Virus record (IMG/VR): IMGVR_UViG_3300040801_004532
Location: 184,137 to 248,136 of that record
Reading direction: 5' to 3' (one strand)
Length of the DNA: 64,000 bases
The notes below the pieces were generated by a model. It worked only from the letters and a program-made list of their open reading frames with translations. It was not told the origin of the DNA and did not search any database. Below are positions 618-16,866 of the stretch, one piece after another (position 1 is the first letter of the stretch; every line of letters starts with the position of its first letter). Position numbers and translations under genes: made by a program.

Positions 618-1000
618 TGAAAATAAAAACAGATTTTGTCACAAATAGTTCATCAACATGCTATATATTTTCATGTAAAAAATATATTCCCAAGGAAGAA
701 TTTGGGTTTAAAAGATTCTTAGCCTTTGATAGCTTTATATGCACAAATAAAAGAGAAGAACTAATTGCATATGCAGATTGTATCCCCGTTAAGAAATGTG
801 ATTGGATAATGTCTGCAATAGGACCATCGAATTTTTATCAACTTTCAGAAAAAGAATTTAGCATGTGTATTGATCTAATAAATGCAGGAAAACACGTAGT
901 TACCGTAAGATTAGATCGTTCACAAGAATATAATATTAACTGTCTTATAGAAAAAATGGAGGAAACAAATTCAGTATTGGTACTCAAGGAGGAACATTGA
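617..1000 (+). CDS. Hypothetical protein of the 'MKIKTDFVTNSSS' N-terminal motif family
   Basis: N-terminus MKIKTDFVTNSSST is the same as that of ORF 39196-39726. Its stop overlaps the radical SAM start. Confidence 0.7.
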   Translation: MKIKTDFVTNSSSTCYIFSCKKYIPKEEFGFKRFLAFDSFICTNKREELIAYADCIPVKKCDWIMSAIGPSNFYQLSEKEFSMCIDLINAGKHVVTVRLDRSQEYNINCLIEKMEETNSVLVLKEEH

Positions 1001-2061
1001 AATCATTAAATACAGCAAAGAGTCCGATAGCAATTGTAAATTGGTTGCTTACAAGAAAATGTAATCTTGAGTGCGACTATTGTGCAATTGTAAAAAATTA
1101 TCCAGACATGCCAAAAAGCTATCCGTTTGTGGGGCATTATTATCAAAATGAAATGTCAACTGAGGTTGTTCTTAAAGCCCTAGAAAAATTTCATAAATAT
1201 AATCCAAATACTTTTCATATCTTTTATGGAGGGGAACCCTTATTAAGAAAAGATTTAGCAACAATAATAAGTTTCTGTAATAACTTGGAGATTCCATATA
1301 CAATAATTAGTAATAACAGCGAAGCTGTGCAGCCTCTAATAGAAAAGCTTTTTGAAGAAGTTGGATTTGTTGAGGGGTTTACAAGCTCTGTTGATCCTAT
1401 TGTCTATACTCAAGAGGATTATGTTGATCCCTCAAGATTACACAAAAGCACTGAAGGATTATCTCGTTTAAAGCATATGAAGAAATGGGCAAATGTTAGG
1501 GACGTGGTTGCTGAAATAACAATTTCACAAGGCATGGAAAATTATTTAATTCCTTTAATTAAAGATTTGAGCGAAAACCAAATTTATAGCGATATTACTT
1601 TCGTTGATATTGCTAAAAATGACTTTTACGATTTTTCAAATGTTAGAGACGAGGAGTTTTTAGTTAAACCAACATTGAAATTAGCAAAGATTTTTCTGGA
1701 GTTACTTGAAAGCGATTATCTAATTCATATGAAAGATCTTCTTCTCCCAGAAATGTTTGATACACTCCCATCAAATTTTGATTGTGATCTTGAAAATCGA
1801 GTCCATAATGTTACAGTTGATGCAGATGGTAGTATGCGCTTATGTCTTAGAATAAAAGGTGAGGTAACTCCAACAATCCATGTTTCAAATTTGTTTGACT
1901 CATCAGGAGCCGTATCAAAAGATTTTTACGATTTAATGTGTGTTGATAAGAGAAGACATTGTGAATTATGCAATCACTCGTGTTTAATGATGAGCAAACA
2001 TATATCCAAAAGACCATCAAAGAAAGATATAATAGATAGTTTATTCCATAGGGAGGACTAA
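997..2061 (+). CDS. Radical SAM protein with C-terminal Cys-containing (SPASM/twitch-like) region
   Basis: CNLECDYC (CxxxCxxC), GGEPLLR motif, C-terminal C261..C and CxxCxxxC. Confidence 0.9.
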   Translation: MKSLNTAKSPIAIVNWLLTRKCNLECDYCAIVKNYPDMPKSYPFVGHYYQNEMSTEVVLKALEKFHKYNPNTFHIFYGGEPLLRKDLATIISFCNNLEIPYTIISNNSEAVQPLIEKLFEEVGFVEGFTSSVDPIVYTQEDYVDPSRLHKSTEGLSRLKHMKKWANVRDVVAEITISQGMENYLIPLIKDLSENQIYSDITFVDIAKNDFYDFSNVRDEEFLVKPTLKLAKIFLELLESDYLIHMKDLLLPEMFDTLPSNFDCDLENRVHNVTVDADGSMRLCLRIKGEVTPTIHVSNLFDSSGAVSKDFYDLMCVDKRRHCELCNHSCLMMSKHISKRPSKKDIIDSLFHRED

Positions 2062-2064
2062 AAG

Positions 2065-2400
2065 ATGCCACAAGCTGACCAAGATGTTATTCGTAGCGCC
2101 ATTGAGTTTTGGGAAAAGGTATATCAGGCGGGAGAAGCAAAGGTAAAATTTACTAAGAAAACAGATGGAACAATCAGAATCATGCGGTTCACTCTTGATT
2201 TTAGCAGGATCCCAAAAAAGCAACATCCAAAAAGTGTAAATATGGCACAGATCCTAAGGTTAATTCAAAAGAGTGGAATTATCCATGTTTATGATTTGGA
2301 CAAAAAAGAGTGGAGATCGGTTCCTTTTAGAAGCGTTGATTGGCTTGAGATCGGAGATGAACGATACAAGATAAGACCATTTAAAAGGGGTGAGAAATGA
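2065..2400 (+). CDS. DUF2693/WYL_2-like SH3-barrel phage protein
   Basis: FTKKTDGTIRIMRFTL and VYDLDKKEWRSV resemble this phage family. Confidence 0.6.
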   Translation: MPQADQDVIRSAIEFWEKVYQAGEAKVKFTKKTDGTIRIMRFTLDFSRIPKKQHPKSVNMAQILRLIQKSGIIHVYDLDKKEWRSVPFRSVDWLEIGDERYKIRPFKRGEK

Positions 2401-2777
2401 CAGTTATAAATGATATTTTGAAAGAAATGAAAACAACAGATCTGACCCAACAGGTCAGACAATTTTGTGATATAATAACAAAAGAAGAAAGAGAAAAATT
2501 TAAAAATCCGGAACTATTACCGAGAGGTGCCAATGTTTTCCTTTCAATTGAAGTACCAGGGAGAAGCGATAAGGAAATCGGTTTTTTAACATTAGAACGT
2601 GAAGGAGAAGAAGACTATTTAATTGTCTATCATACCCTGGAAAAATATAGAGTTTCATCTGATCCAGAGAATATGATACCACCAAGACGAAGAAAAGTAT
2701 GGGCAGTTAATGAAAACAAGGCTGAAAAAATTTTAACCCAGTTTGCTAAAACCGTGAAACTTTTAAGAGGTGAATAA
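2397..2777 (+). CDS. Hypothetical protein
   Basis: ATGA overlap with upstream gene, SD-like GGGTGAG, abuts next gene. Confidence 0.6.
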   Translation: MTVINDILKEMKTTDLTQQVRQFCDIITKEEREKFKNPELLPRGANVFLSIEVPGRSDKEIGFLTLEREGEEDYLIVYHTLEKYRVSSDPENMIPPRRRKVWAVNENKAEKILTQFAKTVKLLRGE

Positions 2778-5351
2778 ATGAAAGATGTTCTGTTAGGTAC
2801 TTCGAATCTAGGAGAAAATCGAGCAGTTGAAGAGATAAGGATTAGCCCAAATTATGCAAATCTGATAATATCAACATTCGAAGGTACAAAGGAGGATGAT
2901 TCTACCCCAGCTATTAAACGAAAAACTATATTCACTAAAGATTATATTTCCAAATTAAATGAGTCAAATAAATTATTTACTGGAAATGTTATGCCTCCGA
3001 ATTGCAGATATATAGAACCAATCAACAGAGGGGTCATTGCAGTTATTGAAGAACCCCCTTCATTTAGGACAATTTTTGTTGATAGAGACCTCCGGGAGGA
3101 ATTTAATGTATTATCAAAACAAGGACGCTTGGATGAATATGAAATACCAAAGAATTTCTTAGAGAAAAACAGACAACCATACTACCTTAATTTAGCAATA
3201 CCTTATACCATCTTTCTTATGTGGATAACGGAATATTTCAGCGTTGGAATAACTGAAGTATATTTTCGTACAAATCAATTGATGGGTCTTTCAGACAACC
3301 TTCTTTTAGCTCCATTTTTAAATATACCAACTGAGCAACGAATTTGCTATCAATCTGGAAATAAATGTATATCCCTAACTGCAGCTATACAACAAGGGAT
3401 TAAGGCCTTTTGGGAATCAACATTTAACTCAGATTATACACACAATTATGAAAGTTATAAAGAAACCCCAGTCGTTGGAAATTATCTTGAATGGCAAGCT
3501 ATGTCTAAAATAAATCCATTGTTTATCTATAACGCAGACTGGCAAGTTAGGCCTTATAATTTAGGTCAAAGAATTAACAATTTAATTGAGCAGGCAGGAG
3601 GAAGGTCAAAAAATAAATTCGGTTATGCAGAACTTGCTGACTTATTTTATTCAAGACTAGATTCAGGCGTTGATATAAAACCTTCTCCAAGATCTAAAAA
3701 TAAATATAGATTGTTTTTTGATATAGCAAATAGTCTATATTTAGATGATATACTTCATATTGAAGTTGGCGATACATTTAAAACACATGATGGAAAGATA
3801 GCATATATTGACTCTCTTGCTGGATTTTCAGATGGGAGCGAAATTAAATATATCCAAATAGATATTAATGGAAAAAAACATCTGATGAAATATACAAAGG
3901 AATGTAAAAAATTCCTTTTTGATAAAGTAAAAGAAGACCGATTTGCCAAAGAATATACGTTATCAAATGGCCAGGTGATTAAGGAAGGTGATATACTTAT
4001 TATAAAACCAACTAAATCTATGGAAATTTTCAGACGAGTTGAATATATAAGAAAAAGCCGTGGCCTTGAAGAAGATGCAGAAATAAGAGTTGGTCGAAAT
4101 TATTACCTTGCATCAAGATTAAAAGCTGAAAAGTTAGATGCTGATGAACCCATATATAAAGGTGTAAAACTAATAAAAGATAAAGAGTATATTATCTCTA
4201 CTGGTGGAGGTGGTATATTTTCTGAGGGTTATAGATGTAAATTTGAAAAACTTGATGCTCACAGAGATTCGTTAGTAGCATCATTTATTCAAAGTGGGGG
4301 ACGAAGACGAACTCTAAACCTGTCGGTTCCAAGACAAACCCAACTAGCTTATCCACTTGATCAAACTAAGCCACTTAAGACAGGAATCTCAAAAATAGGG
4401 AGAAAAGTCTTCACAGTAACTAAAAATGGATCTCATCCAAGCAAAGAAGGAATGTGGCAAGTGGGTCCATCTCTAATATTTGACGGCAGTTATGCAGTAA
4501 ATGCTTTAACTGTTGGGGATTTTATTAAAGAACTATATGATGACGATAAATTTCATATATCCGGGGTAGATTTTGATATTGATTTTGCAATTGGTGAAAA
4601 GGTTGTCGTAGCCAATTGGGAAGACCCCCTTTCTGTTCTATCTGTAAAAACTATTCAGGGGTTTAAGGAAACAGATAATCATTTCGATTTTGTCCTTTCA
4701 GATAAAGCAGGCAATTTAACAACAGAGCAATTTATTGATCCCCAATCAAATATCTATTCTGGCAAAATTAGAAAGGTTACAAATAAATGGGGACGATTAT
4801 CAGTTGGTACAAAAATTATTGCTGATGTACCAGGAATCCCCAACTTTCCGAAGAAGGACGTAAATATTATTGTTGCTTTCATTATTGATATACCAGACGA
4901 ACCGTTAGTATTGTGTTCAAATGGTTGTACGTTATGGTATAACGATGTCGTAGAAAAATTTAAGAAGATAAAGATGGGATCAAAACAATGGGAAAAGCTA
5001 CAACATGTTCCCCTAGATTTATCAAAGATTAAATTTCAGGCAGGGGATGTGGTTAACGGATTCTCTGACTTTAGAGAGTCTGGTGGATACCTTTTATATG
5101 ACCCATCACCAACCAGATCACTGAAAGCAATGCCAATGAATGTTATGCATATTGGAGACGAAGGATATCATTATGTTGCTGATAAATATTTTATGAATGA
5201 TATGATTTTCGATTGTATTCCAGCTCCAAGAGTCGCAACAACTAAAGTTGCCGATTCTGATATAGTTAAGGGATATTTAAATATTAATAGTTACCAGATT
5301 GAAGAAGATGATAGTTCAATATTTTCATTTCTGAAACCAAAGGAGAATTAA
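2778..5351 (+). CDS. Prokaryotic E2 family D (PRTRC protein B-like) domain fused to about 600 aa of beta-rich, possibly SH3/KOW-like, repeats
   Basis: IEEPPSFRTIFV, LAIPYTIF, LLLAPFLNI..ICY and FWESTFNSD resemble Prok-E2_D. Lies directly upstream of JAB and ThiF genes. Confidence 0.65.
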   Translation: MKDVLLGTSNLGENRAVEEIRISPNYANLIISTFEGTKEDDSTPAIKRKTIFTKDYISKLNESNKLFTGNVMPPNCRYIEPINRGVIAVIEEPPSFRTIFVDRDLREEFNVLSKQGRLDEYEIPKNFLEKNRQPYYLNLAIPYTIFLMWITEYFSVGITEVYFRTNQLMGLSDNLLLAPFLNIPTEQRICYQSGNKCISLTAAIQQGIKAFWESTFNSDYTHNYESYKETPVVGNYLEWQAMSKINPLFIYNADWQVRPYNLGQRINNLIEQAGGRSKNKFGYAELADLFYSRLDSGVDIKPSPRSKNKYRLFFDIANSLYLDDILHIEVGDTFKTHDGKIAYIDSLAGFSDGSEIKYIQIDINGKKHLMKYTKECKKFLFDKVKEDRFAKEYTLSNGQVIKEGDILIIKPTKSMEIFRRVEYIRKSRGLEEDAEIRVGRNYYLASRLKAEKLDADEPIYKGVKLIKDKEYIISTGGGGIFSEGYRCKFEKLDAHRDSLVASFIQSGGRRRTLNLSVPRQTQLAYPLDQTKPLKTGISKIGRKVFTVTKNGSHPSKEGMWQVGPSLIFDGSYAVNALTVGDFIKELYDDDKFHISGVDFDIDFAIGEKVVVANWEDPLSVLSVKTIQGFKETDNHFDFVLSDKAGNLTTEQFIDPQSNIYSGKIRKVTNKWGRLSVGTKIIADVPGIPNFPKKDVNIIVAFIIDIPDEPLVLCSNGCTLWYNDVVEKFKKIKMGSKQWEKLQHVPLDLSKIKFQAGDVVNGFSDFRESGGYLLYDPSPTRSLKAMPMNVMHIGDEGYHYVADKYFMNDMIFDCIPAPRVATTKVADSDIVKGYLNINSYQIEEDDSSIFSFLKPKEN

Positions 5352-7057
5352 TGTTTACAGTATTCGTGAATGATGGCACACAGGAAATGCCAGACGATGA
5401 TATTATGTATATTGTTGGGAAAGAGGGTATATTCCTAAAGAAAAAAATGGGAATTATGGAAAGCATTGCTCCCGTTAAAAACATTTCTATTCTAGAGAGT
5501 GTCGGTTCAATGGCGAAAATGCATATTCCGCCCATTCCTGGTCCAACATTTGCAAAGGCGGTTTCCTTTTTCAGAGAAGTTTATAAAGAACATTTTGGAG
5601 AGTCGATTGTTCTTATATTCTTCAATGAAAAAAGTGGAAGATATAAATTATTTCCGCCACATCAAAAGGTTACATCTGCATCATTAGATTACAATAGAGG
5701 CATTACCATCGAAGGATGGACTATGGTTGGAACAATTCATAGTCATGGAGGTATGTCAGCATTCCATTCGGGTGTTGATGATGATGATGAAAAAACATTC
5801 GATGGATTGCATATTACAGTTGGAAATGTAAAAGATGAGGATGTAAGCATCTCTGCATCTATTGTATCCAACGGCTATCGCTTTATGATTGAACCAGAAG
5901 AATATATAAAGCAAGTCAAAAAGACAAAAGAAATTGATGAAGAAAGAACAAGCTATTCAACCAAAGTTTATAAATATGATCCAGTTCAAAAGAAAACTGT
6001 GCTTGATGTAGAGGCAAGCAAAAAAAGAGCCTATAGCTGGAGAAAATATGATAAACGATATAGAGTTATGGTTCCCGAAAGCAAAAGCAAACATCCAGAA
6101 ACATGGATGAACAATGTTGAAAAGGGGACTTATGCCTACAGACGTGGTGGATATTACGGCGGTTATTACGGCAATTATGGGGGATGGGGACATCATTACG
6201 ATAGAAGTGCATGGGGTCAAAGATTCCTGCCTGCCAAAACCCCTACCCAGACAACAAAACCAGGATCACCTCCGTTAAATGTTGGTCCATCGGCCAATGT
6301 AAAACCCGTTGAATTTCCAACTCATGATATACCAGTAGACCCAGATATGCCTTGCCTTACATGCAAGCATAGAGAGTGTAAAATTCTGGGTGAAGCAGAA
6401 GACGAATTTGATGAAGATTTTTATAAATGCGAGAACTGTGGTACCATATACCATGGTGAAATTGATATTTGCGATAAGTGCAATACAGATGATCATTTAA
6501 TTCTTATTGAGGCCAAAGATATGAAAGACCTATATGAGCCTCTTGTTCTTGATGAAATTGACAGAGATGCAGCTATAGCAGCACAACCAGATCAGCTTGG
6601 CTTTACATCATGCCCAGTTTGCAAAAGCGTATTTATGCGATTGGAAACTGATGACGAATGCCCATTTTGTAGTGCAGCGCTTGAAGGAGACAATGAATTA
6701 TTAACAAAACAAGTCGAATGCCCGTGGTGCTATCAAGGGGTATATGAAACAAAATTAGATCATCAACGACGGTGCCCATATTGCCGAAATGAAATCCCTT
6801 TGGATGCCAAACTTTTGACCATAGGATTTGATCCAGATGATGAAATTGAAAATCATATGAGATCTGATTCCGGGCCAGAAGATGAACAATCTGAAGATTT
6901 TCATGAAGAGGTCTTGCGTCAAGCTAAGCAAGCCGACGAATCAATCGAACGAATCCCCGATCCCAGTAAATCTGAAATTCCTATTTCATCCAGATTTACA
7001 GCTAAAAGGATCAAAGATATGATGCGTAAAGCATTTAGGGGGAAAGGTCATGCCTGA
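5351..7057 (+). CDS. JAB/MPN+ metalloprotease (Prok-JAB, PRTRC protein A-like) with Gly/Tyr-rich linker and multiple CxxC zinc ribbons
   Basis: JAMM motif GTIHSHGGMSAFHSGVD (HxH-x7-S-x2-D), DGLHITVG. C-terminal half has CENC/CDKC, CPVC/CPFC and CPWC/CPYC pairs. Confidence 0.85.
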   Translation: MFTVFVNDGTQEMPDDDIMYIVGKEGIFLKKKMGIMESIAPVKNISILESVGSMAKMHIPPIPGPTFAKAVSFFREVYKEHFGESIVLIFFNEKSGRYKLFPPHQKVTSASLDYNRGITIEGWTMVGTIHSHGGMSAFHSGVDDDDEKTFDGLHITVGNVKDEDVSISASIVSNGYRFMIEPEEYIKQVKKTKEIDEERTSYSTKVYKYDPVQKKTVLDVEASKKRAYSWRKYDKRYRVMVPESKSKHPETWMNNVEKGTYAYRRGGYYGGYYGNYGGWGHHYDRSAWGQRFLPAKTPTQTTKPGSPPLNVGPSANVKPVEFPTHDIPVDPDMPCLTCKHRECKILGEAEDEFDEDFYKCENCGTIYHGEIDICDKCNTDDHLILIEAKDMKDLYEPLVLDEIDRDAAIAAQPDQLGFTSCPVCKSVFMRLETDDECPFCSAALEGDNELLTKQVECPWCYQGVYETKLDHQRRCPYCRNEIPLDAKLLTIGFDPDDEIENHMRSDSGPEDEQSEDFHEEVLRQAKQADESIERIPDPSKSEIPISSRFTAKRIKDMMRKAFRGKGHA

Positions 7058-7736
7058 AAACCTAAATATTGTTATAATAGGGCTGGGAGGTATTGGTTCT
7101 GTTTTATCAGAAAGATTAAGTCGATTTCTAAATTATAATAGAGAATTGAAAACAAATATACTATTAGTTGATGGTGATTCATACGAGCCAAAAAATCAAG
7201 ATAGACAAGATTTCCTACAATTCGGAAACAAAGCCGAAATTAAGGCTGATGAATTAGCGATGAAATTTGGCGAGATTGAATTTGATGCCGTTGGTGAATA
7301 TATAAACGACGGCAATATTTCAGAAACAATACGGGATGGAGACATTATCTTCATTTGTGTTGACAATCACAAATCCAGAATGATAATTAACAATTACTGT
7401 AAAACTTTAACCAATGTTATTTTAATTTCTGGTGGGAATGAGCTTACAGATGGAAATGCACAACTTTATGTCAGAGAAGGAGGTGTGGATAAAACTCCCG
7501 ACTTGTGTACATACCATCCAGAGATAGCAAATCCCGACGATAAATTACCCGAAGAAATGTCTTGTGAAGAATTATCCCAGTCAGAGCCACAGTTGTATTT
7601 TACAAATCTAGGAGTGGCTACTCTTATGTGTTGGATGTTTTATAATGCGTTTGTCAATAAAGTATATGATAGATCCGAAGCTTATTTCGATATTCTTACA
7701 ATGTCTGCAGACTCCAAAATCCGAGTTACAAAGTGA
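7050..7736 (+). CDS. ThiF/E1-like adenylating enzyme (PRTRC ThiF-like)
   Basis: IIGLGGIG Rossmann loop, VDGDSYEPKNQDRQ, CVDNHKSR, SGGNE, candidate catalytic Cys in MSCEE, QLYFTN. Confidence 0.9.
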   Translation: MPENLNIVIIGLGGIGSVLSERLSRFLNYNRELKTNILLVDGDSYEPKNQDRQDFLQFGNKAEIKADELAMKFGEIEFDAVGEYINDGNISETIRDGDIIFICVDNHKSRMIINNYCKTLTNVILISGGNELTDGNAQLYVREGGVDKTPDLCTYHPEIANPDDKLPEEMSCEELSQSEPQLYFTNLGVATLMCWMFYNAFVNKVYDRSEAYFDILTMSADSKIRVTK

Positions 7737-7788
7737 ATTGTGAATCTCGGATCAACCAAACTTTTTCTTTCGAAGGGAGAAATGAACA

Positions 7789-8262
7789 ATGGGTGCAACT
7801 TTTACTCGTGATCAACTGGAAGTCAAGACCGCAGTCGAACTGAAACGTATGTGCGTGGACGAGCTGGGAATCCCCGGGATGACCAAAAAGCCGAAGGCCG
7901 TGGTCATCAACGCAATCATGGAAAAATTCGGGACCAGAACCGTGGCCTCCGGCGGCACCATCTCCAAAGATGGTGGCAAAATGACCGGAATGGAATGGCA
8001 GGCCCGAAGTGTCATGACCAAACCGGGTGCTCCTACCGGTGCCAAAACAACCACAACCATCCATGTTTCCTGCGGTGCCTCCGCCGGGAATTTCCCCGTA
8101 GCGGGCCGCAAGGTTTCCGAAGTCGGGGAATTCCTCCGGGAAGTTCTGAACGTGGATCGCCTATCGACCGGCCTGGTCAACGGCCATGAAGTCGACGCCG
8201 GCTATGTCCTGAAACCCGGCGACAATCTCGAGTTCCTCAAACCGGCAGGTAAAAAGGGATAA
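7789..8262 (+). CDS. Ubiquitin-like (beta-grasp) modifier with N-terminal Rho-N/HEH-like helical domain
   Basis: N-terminal LEVKTAVELKRMCVDELGIPGMTKKPKAVVINAI is Rho_N-like. C-terminal IHVSCG..VAGRKVSEV..LNV..LVNG..VLKPGDNLEFLKPAGKKG is beta-grasp-like with a terminal Gly. Confidence 0.8.
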   Translation: MGATFTRDQLEVKTAVELKRMCVDELGIPGMTKKPKAVVINAIMEKFGTRTVASGGTISKDGGKMTGMEWQARSVMTKPGAPTGAKTTTTIHVSCGASAGNFPVAGRKVSEVGEFLREVLNVDRLSTGLVNGHEVDAGYVLKPGDNLEFLKPAGKKG

Positions 8263-8289
8263 ACTGCCATATTAAGCAGTATGTTAGAA

Positions 8290-8309
8290 GGGGGGCCTCC
8301 GGGCCCCCC
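8290..8309 (+). terminator. GC-rich hairpin with UNCG tetraloop after the Ubl gene (attenuator or mRNA stabiliser)
   Basis: GGGGGGCC-TCCG-GGCCCCCC 8-bp stem with only a weak U tract. A second small stem ACTGC..GCAGT lies at 8263-8280. Confidence 0.55.
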
Positions 8310-8337
8310 AATCTTAAAAAAGAGAGGAAATGTATTA

Positions 8338-9234
8338 GTGCTTCGTAAAGTGACAGTAATTGGACTTGGAACTCTTGGTGGGTTCCTTTGCAAGCACATA
8401 TCAGAACTAGAGAATATAAAAGAAATGGTTATCGTTGATAATGATATTGTGGAAAGCAAAAATGTTTTCTCATCTATTTACAAATATTCTCACATTGGCG
8501 AATATAAGGTCGACGCTCTAAAGGAAATAATTGAGGACGATGTTGCTGTCACAATCAGGAAACAAGATTATAGAGAAGGAAGTACAATTTTACCACTCAG
8601 CGATCTAGTAATTGATTGTCGTGATGTGGTTTGTGATAGAAAAGGCGAAATTGATGTAAGATTATTTATATCAGAAAGAATTCTTATTTTCGATTGTAGA
8701 AAATTTGTCAGAAATACTTGTAGTTATGATGGTAGTTATTCTTTAAAATTGAACAAAAGCGAAATAAACAAAGCAGCCTTTTTCGCTGCTCAAATAATAA
8801 ATAGCGAAGAACTCCCCGATATGATAAAAAATAATATGGTTCAAAGAATTGATTTAAATCTATTGCCATCTGTAATGAGCAGAGCAATAAGAAGAACCCT
8901 TGAAAATAAGATAGATATAATTTATGATCTAACAGAGAATGCAAGAAGGTTACATTGCATTGATGAAAATATCCGACCAATCTTAACATTAAATAAACAA
9001 AAAGATACAAAAGTTTTTGTTGGTACAAGGGATGATACCAGAAAATTTCCAGAGGTAATAACGAGCAAGTATCAAATAATACCACAAAATTCATTAAAAG
9101 ATTCTTTCGATGTAATTCAAAAGTTAACTGAAGTTGTTCAAAGACAACCAGGCGTAAGAAATTTCATAGTTACAGTAAGGAGCGAAAATGGGGAAGATTT
9201 TGTCGAGTTACTGGAAGAAACAGGAGCCGCGTGA
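8338..9234 (+). CDS. Second ThiF/E1-like Rossmann protein, truncated fold plus unknown C-terminal domain
   Basis: VIGLGTLGG, VDNDIVESKN, YKVDAL, DLVIDCRD. Likely start is GTG 8338 after SD GAGAGG, because the track start at 8281 runs through the hairpin. Confidence 0.7.
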   Translation: MLRKVTVIGLGTLGGFLCKHISELENIKEMVIVDNDIVESKNVFSSIYKYSHIGEYKVDALKEIIEDDVAVTIRKQDYREGSTILPLSDLVIDCRDVVCDRKGEIDVRLFISERILIFDCRKFVRNTCSYDGSYSLKLNKSEINKAAFFAAQIINSEELPDMIKNNMVQRIDLNLLPSVMSRAIRRTLENKIDIIYDLTENARRLHCIDENIRPILTLNKQKDTKVFVGTRDDTRKFPEVITSKYQIIPQNSLKDSFDVIQKLTEVVQRQPGVRNFIVTVRSENGEDFVELLEETGAA

Positions 9235-9881: not shown

Positions 9882-12548
9882 ATGCCAAAGTTATTGGATT
9901 ATTCTGCATTTTGTGAAAACCTAGAGGAAGTTTCCTCTCTAAAAGTGTTTGGAAAGAAAAAGTTTCATCCACATGGTCTGTTCTCCGAGCAAATTTTCGG
10001 CCCGATAAAAAATTATACTTGCCAATGTGGCATCTATTATGGAATTTCTAAATCGGGCGGTAAATGCGACCTTTGTGGGGTCGATATTGTTAATAGTGAT
10101 GAACGAAGAAAAAGATTTGCAAAAATCAAAATACCAATACCAGTTGTCAATCCAATCTTTTATGATTTGCTTGCAGAGATTGGAGGAAAAACATTAAAGC
10201 ATGCAATTGATGAATTGATGCGTAATGACAAAAGCTTCCTTTATATGGATGGCGGTGAGCATATTATCAGCACAGATGAACCCCCAGATGGAGTACGAAT
10301 ATACGAAAGAACAGATGCAATAATGAAGCTAGTGAGTGATCTAGCAAATCTGTTTGCAAACGATGGGGTAGAAGAATGGAAATTAATTACAAACAATATA
10401 GATAGCCTTTTGATAAACCAAATAATCGTTTTACCTCCGGATCTCAGACCAACATCTGCTTCTGGTGGCGGTAAACATTTGATGGATAAAATCAATAGGT
10501 ATTATGTTCAGATATTAACAAAGAAAGAAATTATGAAAGATACAATGCTTGATATTATACGAGACAAGAAATTATATTATACCTACTTCAAGCAATTGCA
10601 GAAAGATGTAAATGAATTATACCATCGTATATTAGAAAAGATGGCTAAAAAAGAAGGGTTGATCAGAGGAAACATTTTGGGGAAACGAATTGATTTCTCC
10701 GGTAGAGCAGTCATTACTCCTGATCCAACCCTCAACCTTGATGAGTGTGTTTTACCATATACAATGGTTCTGGAGATATTTAAACTTCCGATTGCAAAAC
10801 GAATCATTCAGCTTGGTAAATTTAAACTATTGAATAAAGCTATTGATTTTGTTGATAGATGTATTGAAACAAATTCTCCAGTATTATGCAAAATCTGTGA
10901 AGAGATAACCAAAGATGAGGTATGTATTCTAAACCGTCAACCATCTCTTCATAAACTTGGAATGCTTGGATTTAATATTAAACTAACATTGGATAAGGTT
11001 ATAAAAATACATCCGCTTGTTTGTCCTCCATTCAATGCAGATTTCGATGGAGATCAAATGGCAGTTTATATCCCAATTACAGAAGAAGCAAAACAAGAAG
11101 TTCGTGAAAAAATGTTTGTTACAAAAAATCTAAGTAGTCCGGCAAATGAGGGGTTGACAACAACACCGAGTCAAGATGTAATCCTTGGTATTTATTTTAT
11201 CACATCAGAAGATTATCCAGATCGAGAAGAAGGTTTTAAAATTTTCAATGACTGTCTGCCTTCTGATTATCCAGAAATAAAAGAAATCATAAATAAAAAT
11301 AAATTGATGGTTATTTTAAATGATATTAAAGATAGATATCCAGAAAACACAACAATGAAAGTACTAGATTCAATTAAAAGAGTTGGTTTCAAATATGCAA
11401 CTCTTTTAGGTTCAACAATGTCACTTGATGATTTTGATATTGCTGGCGTCGAAAAAGTGAAGAGTGATATATTTGGAAAAGATGATGTAAGAGAGCAATT
11501 AACCGCTTTTTCTAATCCAGAAGTAACCAGTTTTCTAAAAGATAATTTTCCATATGCTTACATGATCGAATCTGGAGCAAGAGGAAGCTGGGATCAAGCC
11601 AAACAGCTAATATTGGCAAGAGGGTTCATCTCAAATTTTGAAGGCGAAATTCTTCCTGTACCGATTAAACATAGTTTGGTTGAAGGGTTAACTCAAGAGG
11701 AATTCTTTTATTCAACATATGGATGTAGAAAAGGTCTTCTTGATGTTGCGTTGAATACAGGTACAAGCGGATACTTATCTAGAAAATTAATTTTTACATG
11801 TGCGAACCTTCAACTAGATGAAGGACTTGATGATTGCGGAACAACTGACCTATTAGAAGTCGATGTTAAAAACGAAAGAAAAGCAAGAATGTTAGTTAAT
11901 CGCTATTATCTAAATGGCGGAAAACTAGTAAAAATTACACCAGATAACTATAAAGATATAGTTGGAAAAACAATTGAAATAAGAAGTCCGATTTTATGTA
12001 ACTCGCCAAAACTTTGCAAGATTTGTTACGGCGATCTTCATAAAAAATTAAACAGTAGGTTTGTTGGAATCATTGCAGCTCAAACATTGGGCGAGCGAGG
12101 AACTCAGCTTGTATTAAGAACCTTTCATACATCTGGTTCAGCGATTATCAAAGGGGTCGATGATTATAAAGATCAATCAATGAGACAAAGTGATATTATT
12201 GGAGATCTTGCATCGGTCGCAAGGATGCTACATAAATTTACAGGCAAGACATACGTTCAAATAGTAGACGAATTATTTGAGGTTTACAATAAAGATATTT
12301 ACCATGTCCATTTTGAATGTGTAGTTGCACAGCTAATGTGGCACAATAATAAAAAGTGGAGATTATTGAAAAATAGAGATACGGTAAAACCAACGTATTA
12401 TAGTATTCAATCAGTGCCAAATCAAGAGAGTTGGATATTGGCAATGGCATTTTCAAACCCCAAGCGTAGCATTTTACGGGGTATTGTATATGAAGGTAAA
12501 TATTCAGGGATAATGGACAAAATTCTCAAAGGAGAAAAAATTGAATGA
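9882..12548 (+). CDS. rpoC: DNA-directed RNA polymerase beta' subunit (phage-encoded, compact, unsplit)
   Basis: HGLFSEQIFGP, Zn site CQCG..CDLCG, LGKRIDFSGRAVI, LNRQPSLH, catalytic FNADFDGD, SGARG, SGYLSRKL, TQLVLRTFH. Confidence 0.97.
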   Translation: MPKLLDYSAFCENLEEVSSLKVFGKKKFHPHGLFSEQIFGPIKNYTCQCGIYYGISKSGGKCDLCGVDIVNSDERRKRFAKIKIPIPVVNPIFYDLLAEIGGKTLKHAIDELMRNDKSFLYMDGGEHIISTDEPPDGVRIYERTDAIMKLVSDLANLFANDGVEEWKLITNNIDSLLINQIIVLPPDLRPTSASGGGKHLMDKINRYYVQILTKKEIMKDTMLDIIRDKKLYYTYFKQLQKDVNELYHRILEKMAKKEGLIRGNILGKRIDFSGRAVITPDPTLNLDECVLPYTMVLEIFKLPIAKRIIQLGKFKLLNKAIDFVDRCIETNSPVLCKICEEITKDEVCILNRQPSLHKLGMLGFNIKLTLDKVIKIHPLVCPPFNADFDGDQMAVYIPITEEAKQEVREKMFVTKNLSSPANEGLTTTPSQDVILGIYFITSEDYPDREEGFKIFNDCLPSDYPEIKEIINKNKLMVILNDIKDRYPENTTMKVLDSIKRVGFKYATLLGSTMSLDDFDIAGVEKVKSDIFGKDDVREQLTAFSNPEVTSFLKDNFPYAYMIESGARGSWDQAKQLILARGFISNFEGEILPVPIKHSLVEGLTQEEFFYSTYGCRKGLLDVALNTGTSGYLSRKLIFTCANLQLDEGLDDCGTTDLLEVDVKNERKARMLVNRYYLNGGKLVKITPDNYKDIVGKTIEIRSPILCNSPKLCKICYGDLHKKLNSRFVGIIAAQTLGERGTQLVLRTFHTSGSAIIKGVDDYKDQSMRQSDIIGDLASVARMLHKFTGKTYVQIVDELFEVYNKDIYHVHFECVVAQLMWHNNKKWRLLKNRDTVKPTYYSIQSVPNQESWILAMAFSNPKRSILRGIVYEGKYSGIMDKILKGEKIE

Positions 12549-15717: not shown

Positions 15718-16031
15718 AACCAACATGTCCGATTTGTGGTGGAGAAATTTTACTTGAACATATATTAAATTTATCTCATGTATATAAAATAGATAAAGAT
15801 AAATTTATAAGAGAGGACAACAATGATTTAATTAATAGTGGGGGATGGGTTCGTTTAATCTGCGAAAATGACAGAGAGCATCAATTAGAACCCACCCCCA
15901 CATCAGATATACCATATAATGATTTTATAGAATGGAAAGACGCTATCACTGATAAATTTTATGATTCTTGTGATAAAAAAAATATTGAAGGAGAACTAAT
16001 TCATGGAATGTTTGCCAGATATTCAGTGTGA
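15714..16031 (+). CDS. Zinc-ribbon protein
   Basis: Likely start ATG 15714 after GGAG. MKPTCPICG ... LICENDREH. Confidence 0.55.
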   Translation: MKPTCPICGGEILLEHILNLSHVYKIDKDKFIREDNNDLINSGGWVRLICENDREHQLEPTPTSDIPYNDFIEWKDAITDKFYDSCDKKNIEGELIHGMFARYSV

Positions 16032-16866
16032 CTCTCCCAATGTCCCTATTCCAATTCAGCAGGTTGGAGTTGAAAATGTTGAGGTCCCTTTTAGAATCGA
16101 ATCGAAATATGGGGGATATTATCAACTCAACGCAAATGTATCAATGAGGACAAATCTAAATGAAAAGACAAAGGGAATTTCAATGTCCCGCCTGCTCTTA
16201 ACATTGAAACCATATTTGGATTTGCCTCTGAAGCATACTCTTATAAAACAAATTTTAATTGATTTGAAAGACAATGTTGGCAGCGAAGCAAGTTATATGA
16301 AATTTGAATTTCGAATGCCAATTAAAAGAAAATCTATTAAATCAGATAATGAATTTCCAATCTATTACAAATGTAGGTTTGAAGGACAACTTATTCAAAA
16401 TGATAACGGTTCAAATGACAGTTTATTCAGATTTTACCAAGGAGTTGTAATTCAATATGCTTCGTATTGTCCTTGCTCAGCAGAATTATGCAATGATCTA
16501 ACAACAAAAGGAAGTATTGGTTTTCCTCATAACCAAAGATCATTTGCTGATATTCTTGTTGAAGTACAGGAAGATTATTATGTTTGGTTAGAAGATATTA
16601 TTGAAAGCGTTGAGTCAAAAATCAAAACTCTTCCATATCCTGTTATCAAAAGGGTTGATGAGCAAGAGATTGCAAGAGTTGCAGCCGAAAATCCAATGTT
16701 CGTTGAAGATGCGATAAGATTGATTTCACAATCATTAAACCAAAATGAAAAAATCCATGATTGGATTGTAAAATGTAGTCATCAAGAATCAATTCATACA
16801 TCTGAGGCAATTGCAATTAACTGGAAAGGTATTAACGAAGGGTTTAACGGAAGGCGATATTTATGA
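16003..16866 (+). CDS. folE2: GTP cyclohydrolase I type B (FolE2/MptA family)
   Basis: PIQQVGV, KGISMSRL, YCPCS, HNQRS, FVEDAIR and ESIH..A are the family motifs. Confidence 0.93.
   Translation: MECLPDIQCDSPNVPIPIQQVGVENVEVPFRIESKYGGYYQLNANVSMRTNLNEKTKGISMSRLLLTLKPYLDLPLKHTLIKQILIDLKDNVGSEASYMKFEFRMPIKRKSIKSDNEFPIYYKCRFEGQLIQNDNGSNDSLFRFYQGVVIQYASYCPCSAELCNDLTTKGSIGFPHNQRSFADILVEVQEDYYVWLEDIIESVESKIKTLPYPVIKRVDEQEIARVAAENPMFVEDAIRLISQSLNQNEKIHDWIVKCSHQESIHTSEAIAINWKGINEGFNGRRYL

What the first reader, a model, noticed from the sequence alone, without database searches (positions are those of the whole stretch)
2778..5351. E2-D-like domain fused to a string of SH3/KOW-like modules
Seen: after the E2-D-like region (about residues 70-270), six spaced motifs of the form hydrophobic-x-x-G-[D/E/T]-x-hydrophobic occur: IEVGDTF, IKEGDIL, LIKDKEY (degenerate), FAIGEKV, LSVGTKI, FQAGDVV. 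Known: such motifs begin KOW/SH3 barrels, and tandem KOWs occur in Spt5/NusG-type RNAP factors. Inference: this 857-aa protein may be a substrate adaptor (E3-like role) linking the conjugation machinery to RNAP or nucleic acid.
Basis: inference. Interest (0 to 1): 0.6.

Follow-up and report, generated by a model that had tools for sequence, protein, structure and literature searches.

The report
Phage E2 enzyme with barrel arm
A jumbo-phage gene encodes a ubiquitin-conjugating (E2-type) enzyme fused to about seven small SH3-like beta-barrels, sitting in a complete phage-borne ubiquitin-like tagging cassette; it looks like a self-targeting E2/E3 hybrid, but nothing ties it to RNA polymerase.

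Summary
Window 2778-5351 (+) is an 857-aa ORF. Its N-terminus is a Prok-E2_D/UBC-fold domain: Asn182 and Cys190 are identical in 204/204 relatives, with the 8-residue spacing of the HPN...Cys motif. Residues ~292-857 form about seven small beta modules. Three of them match SH3-like barrels (Tudor, KOW, CarD, SH3, FeoA) at Z 5-6.6. The six motifs are real, conserved and enriched: 6 strict matches against 1.3 expected, P about 0.002.

The fusion is fixed across a large uncultivated jumbo-phage family, with 287 clusters at E<=1e-30. In 53/53 viral loci it lies beside an intact JAMM protease, two ThiF E1-like genes and a beta-grasp Ubl ending in Gly.

The best reading is an E3-independent E2 whose barrel arm recruits partners or substrates. 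That is convergent with UBE2O, which pairs five SH3-like domains with a UBC domain.

KOW membership and the RNA-polymerase link are not supported. No KOW profile hit was found, the fold matches are generic, and adjacency to rpoC/rpoB is part of conserved lineage synteny.

The target is unknown. Co-folding with the Ubl gave only weak support (0.54 against 0.00 for controls).

Verdict: a new variant of a known kind.

The parts
2778..5351 (+). Whole gene, 857 aa (P0001): an E2-barrel fusion protein. TAA of the upstream gene abuts its ATG. Its own TAA overlaps the ATG of the JAB gene (TAATG).
2820..2972 (+). N-terminal beta3-alpha subdomain (aa ~15-65). It is shared with stand-alone viral Prok-E2_D proteins.
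   Evidence: DSSP of the models. An Atlas 261-aa viral Prok-E2_D cluster aligns to residues 16-280 (TM 0.71 by target, rmsd 3.1 over 216 residues).
2985..3587 (+). E2/UBC-fold catalytic domain (aa ~70-270), Prok-E2_D type.
   Evidence: Pfam PF14460. In VIA-align the top ~27 of 48,161 representative chains are almost all UBC/UEV folds, at Z 4-5 with 110-125 residues aligned.
3321..3347 (+). Predicted active-site stretch from Asn182 (3321-3323) to Cys190 (3345-3347): N-x7-C, as in the HPN...C motif of canonical E2s.
   Evidence: N182 and C190 are identical in 204/204 full-length relatives. The comparison of the spacing with UbcH5 N77/C85 is from my own knowledge.
3651..3902 (+). Beta module S1 (aa ~292-375), holding motif IEVGDTF at 328. 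It is followed by a long helix at 374-389.
   Evidence: DSSP. SETDB1 triple-Tudor and Spt5 alignments start at 313-327.
3945..4142 (+). Beta module S2 (aa ~390-455), five strands, motif IKEGDIL at 401.
   Evidence: DSSP. No single-domain structural match was listed, so the fold class is inferred.
4140..4373 (+). Beta barrel S3 (aa ~455-532), degenerate motif LIKDKEY at 465. SH3/Tudor-like.
   Evidence: Sds3 capped Tudor Z 6.6 (rmsd 2.4, 67 aligned); AIPP3 BAH Z 6.4; CarD Z 6.0; Mfd Z 5.5; UBE2O Z 4.2.
4371..4553 (+). Beta module S4 (aa ~532-592), five strands plus a helix. It has no strict motif at its start and is the least conserved part.
   Evidence: DSSP; conservation 0.35.
4545..4787 (+). 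Beta barrel S5 (aa ~590-670), motif FAIGEKV at 603. SH3/Tudor/KOW-like.
   Evidence: NdhS Z 6.0 (rmsd 2.0, 56 aligned); ERCC6L2 Tudor Z 5.4; DSIF KOW6-7 Z 5.3; NusG KOW Z 5.0; TraI Z 5.4.
4779..5012 (+). Beta barrel S6 (aa ~668-745), motif LSVGTKI at 674. It is the most conserved part of the protein, with F690 and N715 at 204/204 and S714 and T718 at 200/204.
   Evidence: OSF SH3 Z 5.1 (rmsd 2.0, 54 aligned); S4e Z 5.0; FeoA Z 4.9. Conservation.
5010..5348 (+). C-terminal beta-rich module S7 (aa ~745-857), motif FQAGDVV at 753. Conserved Q754, G756, D757, P817 and R818.
   Evidence: DSSP; conservation. No single-domain structural match was listed.
5351..7057 (+). Partner gene: a JAB/JAMM metalloprotease (PRTRC_A-like N-terminus with an HSH-x7-SxxD motif). 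It is followed by a Gly/Tyr-rich linker, several CxxC zinc-ribbon pairs and an acidic tail.
7050..7736 (+). Partner gene: ThiF-type E1 (GxGxxG and N-x-x-R-Q motifs present).
7789..8262 (+). Partner gene: the Ubl (157 aa). It has an N-terminal HeH/Rho_N-like segment and a C-terminal ThiS/MoaD-like beta-grasp ending ...FLKPAGKKG. Its GC is 0.56 in a window of GC 0.35.
8281..9234 (+). Partner gene: a second ThiF-like protein. It has GxGxxG but no R-Q motif, plus a C-terminal domain of about 200 aa.
997..2777 (+). Upstream genes that co-occur with the cassette: radical SAM (997-2061), WYL_2 Sm/SH3-like barrel (2065-2400) and a 126-aa protein of unknown fold (2397-2777).

Best explanation
P0001 is the E2 of a phage-encoded ubiquitin-like conjugation cassette, built as an E2/E3 hybrid.

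Proposed sequence of events:
1. The ThiF E1 (7050-7736) adenylates the C-terminal glycine of the 157-aa Ubl. The second, degenerate ThiF (8281-9234) may be its partner.
2. The Ubl is passed as a thioester to Cys190 of the N-terminal UBC-fold domain, with Asn182 in the oxyanion role.
3. The C-terminal arm of about seven SH3-like beta modules recruits the acceptor protein, or holds the partner enzymes, so that the Ubl is transferred without a separate E3. The arm's most conserved patch lies in modules S5-S7.
4. The translationally coupled JAMM protease reverses or edits the mark.

What is shown:
- the domain architecture;
- an intact active-site signature;
- fixed fusion and strict co-occurrence with the E1, Ubl and JAB genes.

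What is inferred:
- thioester chemistry;
- that the barrels select substrates;
- E3 independence.

The target, whether a host or a phage protein, is unknown.
For: E2 identity:
- PF14460 matches 52/55 N-termini.
- In an unbiased comparison with 48,161 chains, the top hits are almost exclusively UBC/UEV folds. They cover 110-125 residues of model positions 70-250 at Z 4-5.
- N182 and C190 are invariant in 204/204 relatives.

Barrel arm:
- The model is confident (pLDDT 88.2).
- Foldseek's best PDB hits are multi-barrel proteins: Spt5 (E 1e-5), Mind bomb REP, SETDB1 triple Tudor and UBE2O.
- Single modules match SH3-class barrels at Z 5-6.6.

Fixed fusion:
- All top 150 of 1830 HMMER hits have the same ~820-960-aa architecture or are fragments of it.
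- All 53 IMG/VR loci have the N- and C-terminal parts in one frame.
- The only short hit, P0094, is a split full-length gene.

Cassette:
- JAB, ThiF1, Ubl and ThiF2 are each present in 53/53 loci.
- The JAMM motif and the E1 motifs are intact.
- The Ubl tail ...KPAG[KR]KG is conserved.
- The P0001 stop overlaps the JAB start as TAATG.

Precedent: UBE2O uses five SH3-like domains to bind substrates beside its UBC domain, and it acts without an E3 (PMC12818219).

Co-fold of P0001 with Ubl residues 70-157:
- ipSAE 0.54 against 0.00 for the best of 3 controls; verdict 'weak support'.
- In the tool's calibration 58 of 80 solved complexes and 2 of 110 mismatched pairs reached the mark.
- At 0.60 or under, only 7 of those 80 solved complexes did, as did both mismatches that passed.
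- The runs share at least 55% of their contacts, and the partner's pLDDT is at least 71.
Against: - No biochemical data exist for any member of the family.
- The structural Z-scores are modest (4-6.6), and the tool warns that such values are common.
- The co-fold gives only weak support, with no interface reported.
- The barrels have no sequence-profile match to any peptide- or ubiquitin-binding family.
- The modules are not detectably homologous to each other.
- The conserved patch in S6 could serve E1, JAB or Ubl docking instead of substrate choice.
- The Ubl ends in Lys-Gly and not Gly-Gly, which is unusual for E1 substrates.
Confidence: 0.55

Rival explanations
1. One reading: the barrel string is a KOW/NusG/Spt5-like or CarD-like module. 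It docks the E2 on the phage's own RNA polymerase or on nucleic acid, so that the polymerase or a DNA/RNA-bound protein is the thing tagged.
For: - Foldseek's top hits for the whole model are Spt5 chains in Pol II complexes (E 1e-5).
- Module S3 matches the RNAP-binding Tudor-like domains of CarD (Z 6.0), CdnL, Mfd (Z 5.5) and the UvrD C-terminal domain (Z 4.8). Module S5 matches the KOW domains of DSIF and NusG (Z 5.0-5.3).
- rpoC and rpoB follow the cassette in every locus that has enough flank.
- The Ubl has a possible HeH/Rho_N-like N-terminus (E 0.21, sub-threshold).
Against: - The same modules match Tudor, BAH, PsaE/NdhS, BirA, FeoA and SH3 domains equally well or better. TM-scores to Spt5 are only 0.08-0.15.
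- No KOW profile hit appears in 60 family members at E<=1, and there is no NGN domain.
- The gene order from SbcCD to rpoB is a conserved backbone of the lineage, so adjacency is not specific.
- Module pI values are mixed (4.7-9.4).
Confidence: 0.12
2. The barrel arm is an assembly or regulatory scaffold and not a substrate receptor. It would hold the E1 pair, the JAB protease and the Ubl in one particle, or auto-inhibit the E2. Target choice would lie elsewhere, for example in the zinc-ribbon tail of the JAB protein or in the WYL_2 or 126-aa proteins.
For: - P0001 is translationally coupled to both the 126-aa gene and the JAB gene.
- The most conserved surface candidates (F690, S714, N715, T718, D757, R818) are nearly invariant over 204 sequences. 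That fits docking of equally conserved partners better than recognition of a fast-evolving target.
- Ubl, ThiF1 and JAB are more conserved than P0001.
- The co-fold with the Ubl gives weak support for some contact: 0.54 against 0.00 for controls.
Against: - About 570 residues and seven modules is a lot for a pure scaffold.
- Modules S3-S4 vary quickly (conservation 0.35), as expected of a specificity surface.
- UBE2O shows that such arms can bind substrates.
Confidence: 0.17
3. The cassette is not a protein-tagging system. Instead it is a sulfur-carrier or biosynthetic pathway: a ThiS/MoaD-like carrier, a ThiF adenylyltransferase, a JAB that trims or releases, and the neighbouring radical-SAM enzyme. 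It might serve a nucleic-acid or cofactor modification, with Cys190 of P0001 acting as a persulfide or acyl relay.
For: - The Ubl is ThiS/MoaD-like, and the best named hits of the ThiF genes are ThiF/MoeB.
- A radical-SAM gene co-occurs in 51/53 loci.
- folE2 (16003-16866) and PTPS genes lie nearby.
- JAB partners are known in CysO and QbsE sulfur-carrier pathways (my knowledge; also discussed in PMC1779556).
Against: - Known sulfur-carrier pathways need no E2.
- The invariant Asn-x7-Cys signature and the UBC fold point to thioester transfer to an amine.
- No rhodanese or cysteine desulfurase domain was seen in the cassette.
- The carrier tail is KG and not GG.
Confidence: 0.08

Closest known systems
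UBE2O (eukaryotic E2/E3 hybrid; PDB 7UN6, 7YW1; PMC12818219)
   Same: A single polypeptide combines a UBC-fold catalytic domain with a multi-module arm of SH3-like barrels. UBE2O has five such barrels, which bind substrates, and it acts without a separate E3. UBE2O appears among the structural hits here (Foldseek E 2e-3; VIA Z 4.2 on module S3).
   Different: - There is no detectable sequence relationship.
- The domain order is reversed: the barrels are C-terminal here and N-terminal in UBE2O.
- There are about seven modules here, not five.
- The UBC domain is of the prokaryotic E2_D type.
- The modifier is a ThiS/MoaD-like Ubl with a KG tail, activated by ThiF-type E1s.
- The protein is encoded by a phage.
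Prok-E2_D family / E1-E2-JAB-Ubl operons of Iyer, Burroughs and Aravind (PMC1779556, Table 1 row 6d) and NCBIfam's PRTRC cassette
   Same: - The E2 domain matches PF14460.
- The neighbouring JAB matches PRTRC_A (E 3.7e-10) and the ThiF matches PRTRC_ThiF (E 1.2e-10).
- The parts list is the same: Ubl, E1, E2 and JAB.
   Different: - All PRTRC scores are far below the curated cutoffs (39.7 against 101.8 bits; 41.1 against 144.75 bits).
- No ParB gene is in the neighbourhood.
- There is no conserved His after the catalytic Cys.
- There are two ThiF genes.
- The E2 carries a 570-aa barrel arm.
- The cassette is a core part of a jumbo-phage genome and not of plasmids or ICEs.
Bacterial antiviral Ubl systems (Bil, Bub, CBASS Cap2/Cap3)
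   Same: They share the E1-E2-Ubl/DUB logic. BubB, the CdnG-E2 and Cap2 appear among the E2-fold matches (Z 3.5-4.2). The ThiF genes hit the PADLOC E1-E2 and BilD models weakly.
   Different: P0001 has no PADLOC hit. The system is carried by the virus and not by the host. It has no CD-NTase, and the E2 architecture is different.
Spt5/NusG KOW arrays and CarD/Mfd Tudor-like RNAP-interacting domains
   Same: The same SH3-like small-barrel fold class. Spt5 is the top Foldseek hit for the multi-barrel region.
   Different: There is no KOW or CarD_CdnL_TRCF profile match, no NGN domain, and only low global TM-scores (0.08-0.15). The resemblance is at the level of fold class only.

Membership tests
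Prok-E2_D (PF14460) / UBC superfamily | Profile match to PF14460 | tested here: met
   P0001:1-300 scores 25.0 bits, equal to the 25-bit cutoff (E 1.8e-5). 52/55 relatives match at E<=0.01, best 5.6e-9. This protein is borderline on its own; the match is clear at family level.
Prok-E2_D (PF14460) / UBC superfamily | UBC/E2 fold | tested here: met
   A search without Foldseek against 48,161 chains puts almost only UBC/UEV proteins in ranks 1-27, at Z 4.1-5.0 with 96-125 residues aligned to model positions 70-~250. The second look gave E2s in the top 28 rows. The Z values are modest.
Prok-E2_D (PF14460) / UBC superfamily | Catalytic Cys preceded by a conserved Asn (HPN-like loop) | tested here: met
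   N182 and C190 are 204/204 identical and 8 residues apart. P179 is only 137/204, and there is no His at the HPN position.
Prok-E2_D (PF14460) / UBC superfamily | Forms a thioester with its Ubl | not testable with these tools
   The co-fold with the Ubl gave only weak support: 0.54 against 0.00 for controls.
Operon type 6d of PMC1779556 (E2 with a conserved His after the Cys) | Absolutely conserved His C-terminal to the catalytic Cys | tested here: not met
   The first His after C190 in P0001 is H222, where 43/66 relatives have Tyr. No His downstream of C190 is invariant in the E2 domain. Equating row 6d with PF14460 is my inference.
PRTRC cassette (NCBIfam TIGR03735-03741) | Component proteins reach the curated cutoffs, and a ParB homologue is present | tested here: not met
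   PRTRC_A scores 39.7 against 101.8 bits and PRTRC_ThiF 41.1 against 144.75 bits. P0001 matches no NCBIfam model. No ParB was found in the genes scanned.
KOW / NusG-Spt5 | KOW motif profile (PF00467) and an associated NGN domain | tested here: not met
   The table for P0001's own piece shows no KOW hit at E<=1, and none of the listed families is matched by more than 2 of the 60 C-terminal pieces (25 of 37 families are listed). There is no NGN domain.
KOW / NusG-Spt5 | SH3-like five-stranded barrel | tested here: met
   DSIF KOW6-7 Z 5.3 and NusG KOW Z 5.0 on residues 600-667. Tudor, SH3, PsaE and FeoA score the same or better, so this feature is not diagnostic.
UBE2O-type E2/E3 hybrid (functional class, not a homology family) | UBC domain and multiple SH3-like domains in one chain | tested here: met
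   The domain order is reversed relative to UBE2O.
UBE2O-type E2/E3 hybrid (functional class, not a homology family) | E3-independent transfer to substrates bound by the SH3-like arm | not testable with these tools
   This needs in-vitro conjugation assays.
Known anti-phage Ubl systems (PADLOC Bil, CBASS E1-E2) | Profile match of the E2 protein | tested here: not met
   P0001 has 0 PADLOC families. Only the ThiF genes hit the E1-E2/BilD models, and weakly.

The most novel reading that the evidence does not exclude
A large clade of uncultivated jumbo phages carries, as a core module, a complete and self-sufficient ubiquitin-like conjugation cascade. Its parts are:
- an active ThiF and a degenerate ThiF, resembling a heterodimeric E1;
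- a Ubl whose gene has strikingly high GC and may be highly expressed;
- a JAMM deconjugase;
- an E2 that has convergently evolved the UBE2O solution, a UBC domain plus an SH3-like multi-barrel substrate arm.

With this cascade the virus itself would tag host or viral proteins during infection. This would be a virus-of-prokaryotes counterpart of the host Bil, Bub and CBASS systems, and an E3-independent E2 outside eukaryotes.
Probability: 0.4. Interest if true: 0.8.

Novelty: new variant of a known kind. Interest (0 to 1): 0.6.

Why it matters
Experimentally studied ubiquitin-like conjugation in prokaryotes has so far come from host systems: the Bil, Bub and CBASS defence systems and the archaeal SAMPs. 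In the paper library searched here I found no description of a phage-encoded E1-E2-Ubl-JAB cassette of this type, or of an E2 fused to a barrel arm.

If the cassette is active, several things follow:
- The phage would write its own Ubl marks on host or viral proteins during infection.
- According to PMC12818219, only UBE2O and BIRC6 are known to act as E3-independent E2s. This protein would be a compact third case, independently evolved.
- It would give a tractable minimal system (five genes) for studying how an E2 achieves substrate choice without an E3.
- The family is large, with 1830 representative clusters at E<=1e-3, and all its members are annotated as hypothetical proteins.

Tried and rejected
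1. A second catalytic Cys or a zinc site in the conserved S6/S7 region (C713, C717, H743, C813). Rejected. Over 204 sequences C713 is replaced by F, L or M in 26, H743 is kept in only 128, and C813 is Gly in 91. These look like core residues and not like ligands.

2. The barrels as recent tandem repeats. hhalign of the seven module profiles against each other gave no probability above 28.5%.

3. KOW, SH3 or Tudor membership by sequence. No such family was recurrent: SH3_9 matched 1 of 60 pieces at E 0.1, and no KOW or Tudor family was listed.

4. Relatives among cultured phages: none by DNA or tblastn. The JAB gene finds only short, weak matches.

5. Relatives in 185k GTDB genomes: none by pattern scan.

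6. PDB sequence relatives: none.

- Word searches with residues 1-290 and with the 55-sequence profile found only P0094.
- P0094 is the first half of a split full-length gene.
- Structurally similar stand-alone viral E2_D proteins of about 240-260 aa do exist. Their operons could not be retrieved.

8. Apparent in-frame stops in four IMG/VR loci (L040, L043, L045, L056). This is an artefact: the upstream 126-aa gene is in the same frame, separated by a single stop codon. There is no sign of stop-codon recoding.

9. ESM Atlas feature searches of residues 590-857 and of the 126-aa protein scored at most 0.80, which is noise level.

10. The conserved [KR]GE C-terminus of the 126-aa protein looked Pup-like. 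However, those codons spell the Shine-Dalgarno sequence of the E2 gene, so nothing is claimed.

11. Co-folding with RNAP beta/beta' was not attempted.

12. No reads tools were used. Nothing in the window was taken for human sequence.
Full report
CONTEXT. The window is the last 64 kb of a 248,136-bp IMG/VR virus record, which CheckV estimates to be 79% complete. Its GC content is 35%. It carries tailed-phage genes:
- a large terminase at 22789-24441 and a baseplate wedge protein at 30610-33063;
- its own two-subunit RNA polymerase, beta' at 9882-12548 and beta at 12545-15544;
- an SbcC-like gene at 3-617;
- folE2 at 16003-16866.
No cultured phage has similar DNA or a P0001 homologue. A pattern scan of 185,579 GTDB species genomes found no relative.

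THE OBSERVATION. ORF 2778-5351 (+) encodes 857 aa.
- The strict pattern hydrophobic-x-x-G-[DET]-x-hydrophobic occurs six times, against 1.29 +/- 1.14 in 5000 shuffles (P=0.0016).
The sixth strict match is LTVGDFI at 577.
- The glycine and the following acidic or Thr residue are nearly invariant in 66 relatives.

THE N-TERMINAL DOMAIN IS AN E2.
- Pfam Prok-E2_D matches residues 170-243. The score is 22.8 bits in the whole protein and 25.0 bits, exactly the cutoff, in residues 1-300.
- 52 of 55 relatives' N-termini match it, best E 5.6e-9.
- A separate AlphaFold2 model of residues 1-300 (pLDDT 89.6) was compared with 48,161 representative PDB chains without any Foldseek prefilter.
- Ranks 1-27 are almost exclusively UBC/UEV-fold proteins: UBE2S, UbcH7, UbcH10, Ubc8, UBE2K, UbcH5, Ubc13/Mms2 and Tsg101, plus the bacterial BubB and the CBASS E2. 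They score Z 4.1-5.0, with 96-125 residues aligned to model positions 70-~250.
- The second look at Foldseek's own list gave E2s in the top 28 rows.
- Foldseek alone was not significant (best E 0.16). The fold assignment therefore rests on the consistency of the hits and not on any single score.
- In 204 full-length relatives Asn182 and Cys190 are 204/204 identical, as are E91, R97, P142, W212 and Y227.
- The Asn-to-Cys spacing of 8 equals that of the HPN...Cys motif in canonical E2s (my knowledge).
- The ESM Atlas holds a mostly viral cluster of 261-aa stand-alone Prok-E2_D proteins that superposes on residues 16-280 (TM 0.71 by target). The whole N-terminal 280 residues are thus one known unit, and everything after it is an addition.

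THE C-TERMINAL 570 RESIDUES ARE A STRING OF SMALL BARRELS. The full-length model is confident: mean pLDDT 88.2 and pTM 0.62, with values mostly between 80 and 97 across residues 290-850.
- Its secondary structure parses into about seven beta modules: S1 292-375, S2 390-455, S3 455-532, S4 532-592, S5 590-670, S6 668-745 and S7 745-857. One long helix lies at 374-389.
- Five of the six motifs lie at the turn just before the first main strand of a module. S4 has no strict motif.
- Foldseek against the PDB puts Spt5 chains first (E 1.2e-5), followed by Mind bomb REP, SETDB1 triple Tudor and UBE2O. The TM-scores are only 0.06-0.25, because the relative placement of the barrels differs.
- VIA-align resolves single modules. 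S3 matches the Sds3 capped Tudor domain (Z 6.6, rmsd 2.4, 67 residues), the AIPP3 BAH domain (6.4), CarD (6.0) and Mfd (5.5).
- S5 matches NdhS (6.0), the ERCC6L2 Tudor domain (5.4), DSIF KOW6-7 (5.3) and the NusG KOW domain (5.0).
- S6 matches an SH3 domain (5.1, rmsd 2.0), S4e (5.0) and FeoA (4.9).
- S1 is covered by two-barrel alignments to the SETDB1 Tudor domains that start at residues 313-316. S2, S4 and S7 have no listed single-domain match.
- The barrels are not detectably homologous to one another (hhalign probability at most 28.5%).
- No Pfam family was matched by more than 2 of the 60 C-terminal pieces, even at E<=1. No KOW or Tudor family was listed, and SH3_9 matched one piece at E 0.1.
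The conclusion is that these are SH3-class barrels, but they cannot be called KOW domains.

THE FUSION IS FIXED AND THE FAMILY IS LARGE.
- The word search found 93 clusters, nearly all of 830-893 aa.
- The exhaustive HMMER search found 1830 representatives at E<=1e-3, 994 at E<=1e-10 and 287 at E<=1e-30. All of the top 150 have the same architecture or are fragments of it.
- Searches with the E2 part alone, which allow shorter proteins to appear, found one 309-aa protein. Its next ORF continues with residues 353 onward of P0001, so it is a split full-length gene.
- In 53 IMG/VR loci the N- and C-terminal parts are always contiguous, in frames of 803-973 aa. Four apparent exceptions are an artefact of the upstream gene lying in the same frame.
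None was found within sequence-detectable range.

THE CASSETTE. The same 53 loci all carry the JAB, ThiF1, Ubl and ThiF2 genes. WYL_2 is present in 52, the radical-SAM gene in 51 and the 126-aa gene in 49; some of the absences come from truncated contigs. The order SbcD-SbcC-x-rSAM-WYL_2-p126-E2-JAB-ThiF-Ubl-(x)-ThiF-(x)-rpoC-rpoB is kept even in members with only 25-30% identity.
- JAB protein: it has an intact JAMM signature (HSH-x7-SGVD) and is distantly PRTRC_A-like.
- ThiF1: it has GxGxxG and N-x-x-R-Q motifs.
- ThiF2: it keeps GxGxxG but has S-S where R-Q should be, and it adds a C-terminal domain of about 200 aa. This suggests a heterodimeric E1, but it is untested.
- Ubl: its beta-grasp half and its tail ...FLKPAG[KR]KG are identical across three relatives whose whole Ubl proteins are 55-65% identical to the window's.
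- Gene junctions: the P0001 stop overlaps the JAB start as TAATG, and the stop of the 126-aa gene abuts the P0001 ATG.
- Co-fold: P0001 with Ubl residues 70-157 scored ipSAE 0.54 against 0.00 for the best of three controls, which the tool calls weak support. In its calibration 58 of 80 solved complexes and 2 of 110 mismatched pairs reached the mark. At 0.60 or under, only 7 of those 80 solved complexes did, as did both mismatches that passed. The runs agree in at least 55% of their contacts, the partner's pLDDT is at least 71, and no interface was reported.

MECHANISM. The most economical reading is that P0001 is the cassette's E2, loaded on Cys190 by the ThiF E1, and that its barrel arm supplies what an E3 normally supplies.
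- The solved precedent is UBE2O. Its five SH3-like domains form the substrate-binding site next to the UBC domain, and it works without an E3 (PMC12818219).
- The phage protein would be a convergent version with reversed domain order.
- I considered whether the highly conserved S6 stretch (LCSNGCTLW) marks a second catalytic cysteine or a zinc site. Over 204 sequences C713 is often F, L or M, and H743 and C813 are poorly kept. This idea is rejected.
- The invariant polar residues there (S714, N715, T718, D757, R818, R665) and F690 more likely form a docking surface. Whether it docks a substrate, the Ubl, the E1 or the JAB protein cannot be decided here.

RIVALS.
- The RNAP/nucleic-acid adaptor idea is not excluded, because CarD-, Mfd- and KOW-like matches exist. 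But it has no specific support: the matches are generic for the fold class, no KOW profile is hit, and the adjacency to RNAP belongs to a conserved genomic backbone.
- A pure scaffold or regulatory role for the arm is plausible.
- A sulfur-carrier pathway is unlikely, given the invariant E2 signature.

NOVELTY. The parts (Prok-E2_D, JAB, ThiF and Ubl) were predicted in bacteria in 2006 (PMC1779556). Here the PRTRC models are matched only far below their cutoffs, and there is no ParB. In the literature library I found no description of this fusion or of a phage-borne cassette of this kind. One preprint notes ThiF/E1-like genes in Asgard-archaeal viruses, with no E2. I class the finding as a new variant of a known kind.

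LIMITS.
- No model coordinates were available, so module boundaries come from secondary structure and alignment ranges.
- The structural Z-scores are modest.
- The host and the target are unknown.
- No reads tools were used.

Noticed in passing
window 7789-8262 (+): The Ubl gene is an extreme compositional outlier. Its GC is 0.56 and GC3 0.63, in a window with GC 0.35 and median GC3 0.25; the next-highest ORF has GC3 0.36. In all 53 related loci the Ubl gene is 0.07-0.21 richer in GC than its locus, but GC3 is strongly raised only in some lineages. Candidate causes are very high expression or codon selection, amino-acid composition, and exchange between phages. It also creates long spurious ORFs on both strands (7726-8064, 7812-8180, 7851-8189).
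   Followed up: partly
window 7050-7736 and 8281-9234 (+): There are two ThiF-like genes. The first keeps the GxGxxG and N-x-x-R-Q adenylation motifs. The second keeps GxGxxG but has S-S in place of R-Q, and it adds a C-terminal domain of about 200 aa ending ...LLEETGAA. This looks like an active/inactive E1 pair, reminiscent of eukaryotic heterodimeric E1s. It is read from the sequence only.
   Followed up: no
window 5351-7057 (+): The JAB protein has an intact JAMM motif. It is followed by a Gly/Tyr-rich low-complexity linker (GGYYGGYYGNYGGWG), then four to five CxxC zinc-ribbon pairs and an acidic tail. Distant relatives of the cassette have a JAB-position protein of only about 346 aa, without the tail. 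The tail is therefore a lineage-specific addition that could itself be a targeting element.
   Followed up: partly
window 7789-7930 (+): The N-terminal ~45 residues of the Ubl resemble a Rho_N/HeH motif (Pfam E 0.21, sub-threshold), and the C-terminus weakly matches the TGS beta-grasp (E 0.061). A modifier with a helix-extended-helix head would be unusual.
   Followed up: partly
window 997-2777 (+): A radical-SAM/SPASM-like enzyme, a WYL_2 (Sm/SH3-like barrel) protein and a 126-aa protein of unknown fold co-occur with the cassette in 49-52 of 53 loci. The 126-aa gene is directly abutted to the E2 gene. Its conserved [KR]GE end coincides with the E2 gene's Shine-Dalgarno sequence.
   Followed up: partly
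window 9882-15544 (+): The phage encodes unsplit, compact RNA polymerase beta' (888 aa) and beta (999 aa) subunits. The beta' subunit is only about 27-34% identical to its closest matches in the phage collection, which include bacterial rpoC in mislabelled records and Rhizobium jumbo phages. Small ORFs separate the two genes in relatives.
   Followed up: no
window 16003-16866 (+); L002 1873-2295: A folE2 GTP cyclohydrolase in the window, and PTPS (QueD-like) genes in syntenic relatives, suggest a 7-deazaguanine or pterin-type pathway in this phage lineage.
   Followed up: no
L002 (NCBI GCA_048882605.1, 255,557-bp contig): A syntenic relative of the whole block sits on a contig deposited as a 'Candidatus Thorarchaeota archaeon' MAG. 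The gene content (terminase-type phage genes in the window, bacterial-type beta/beta', Shine-Dalgarno use) suggests a binned phage contig rather than archaeal DNA. The host is unresolved.
   Followed up: no
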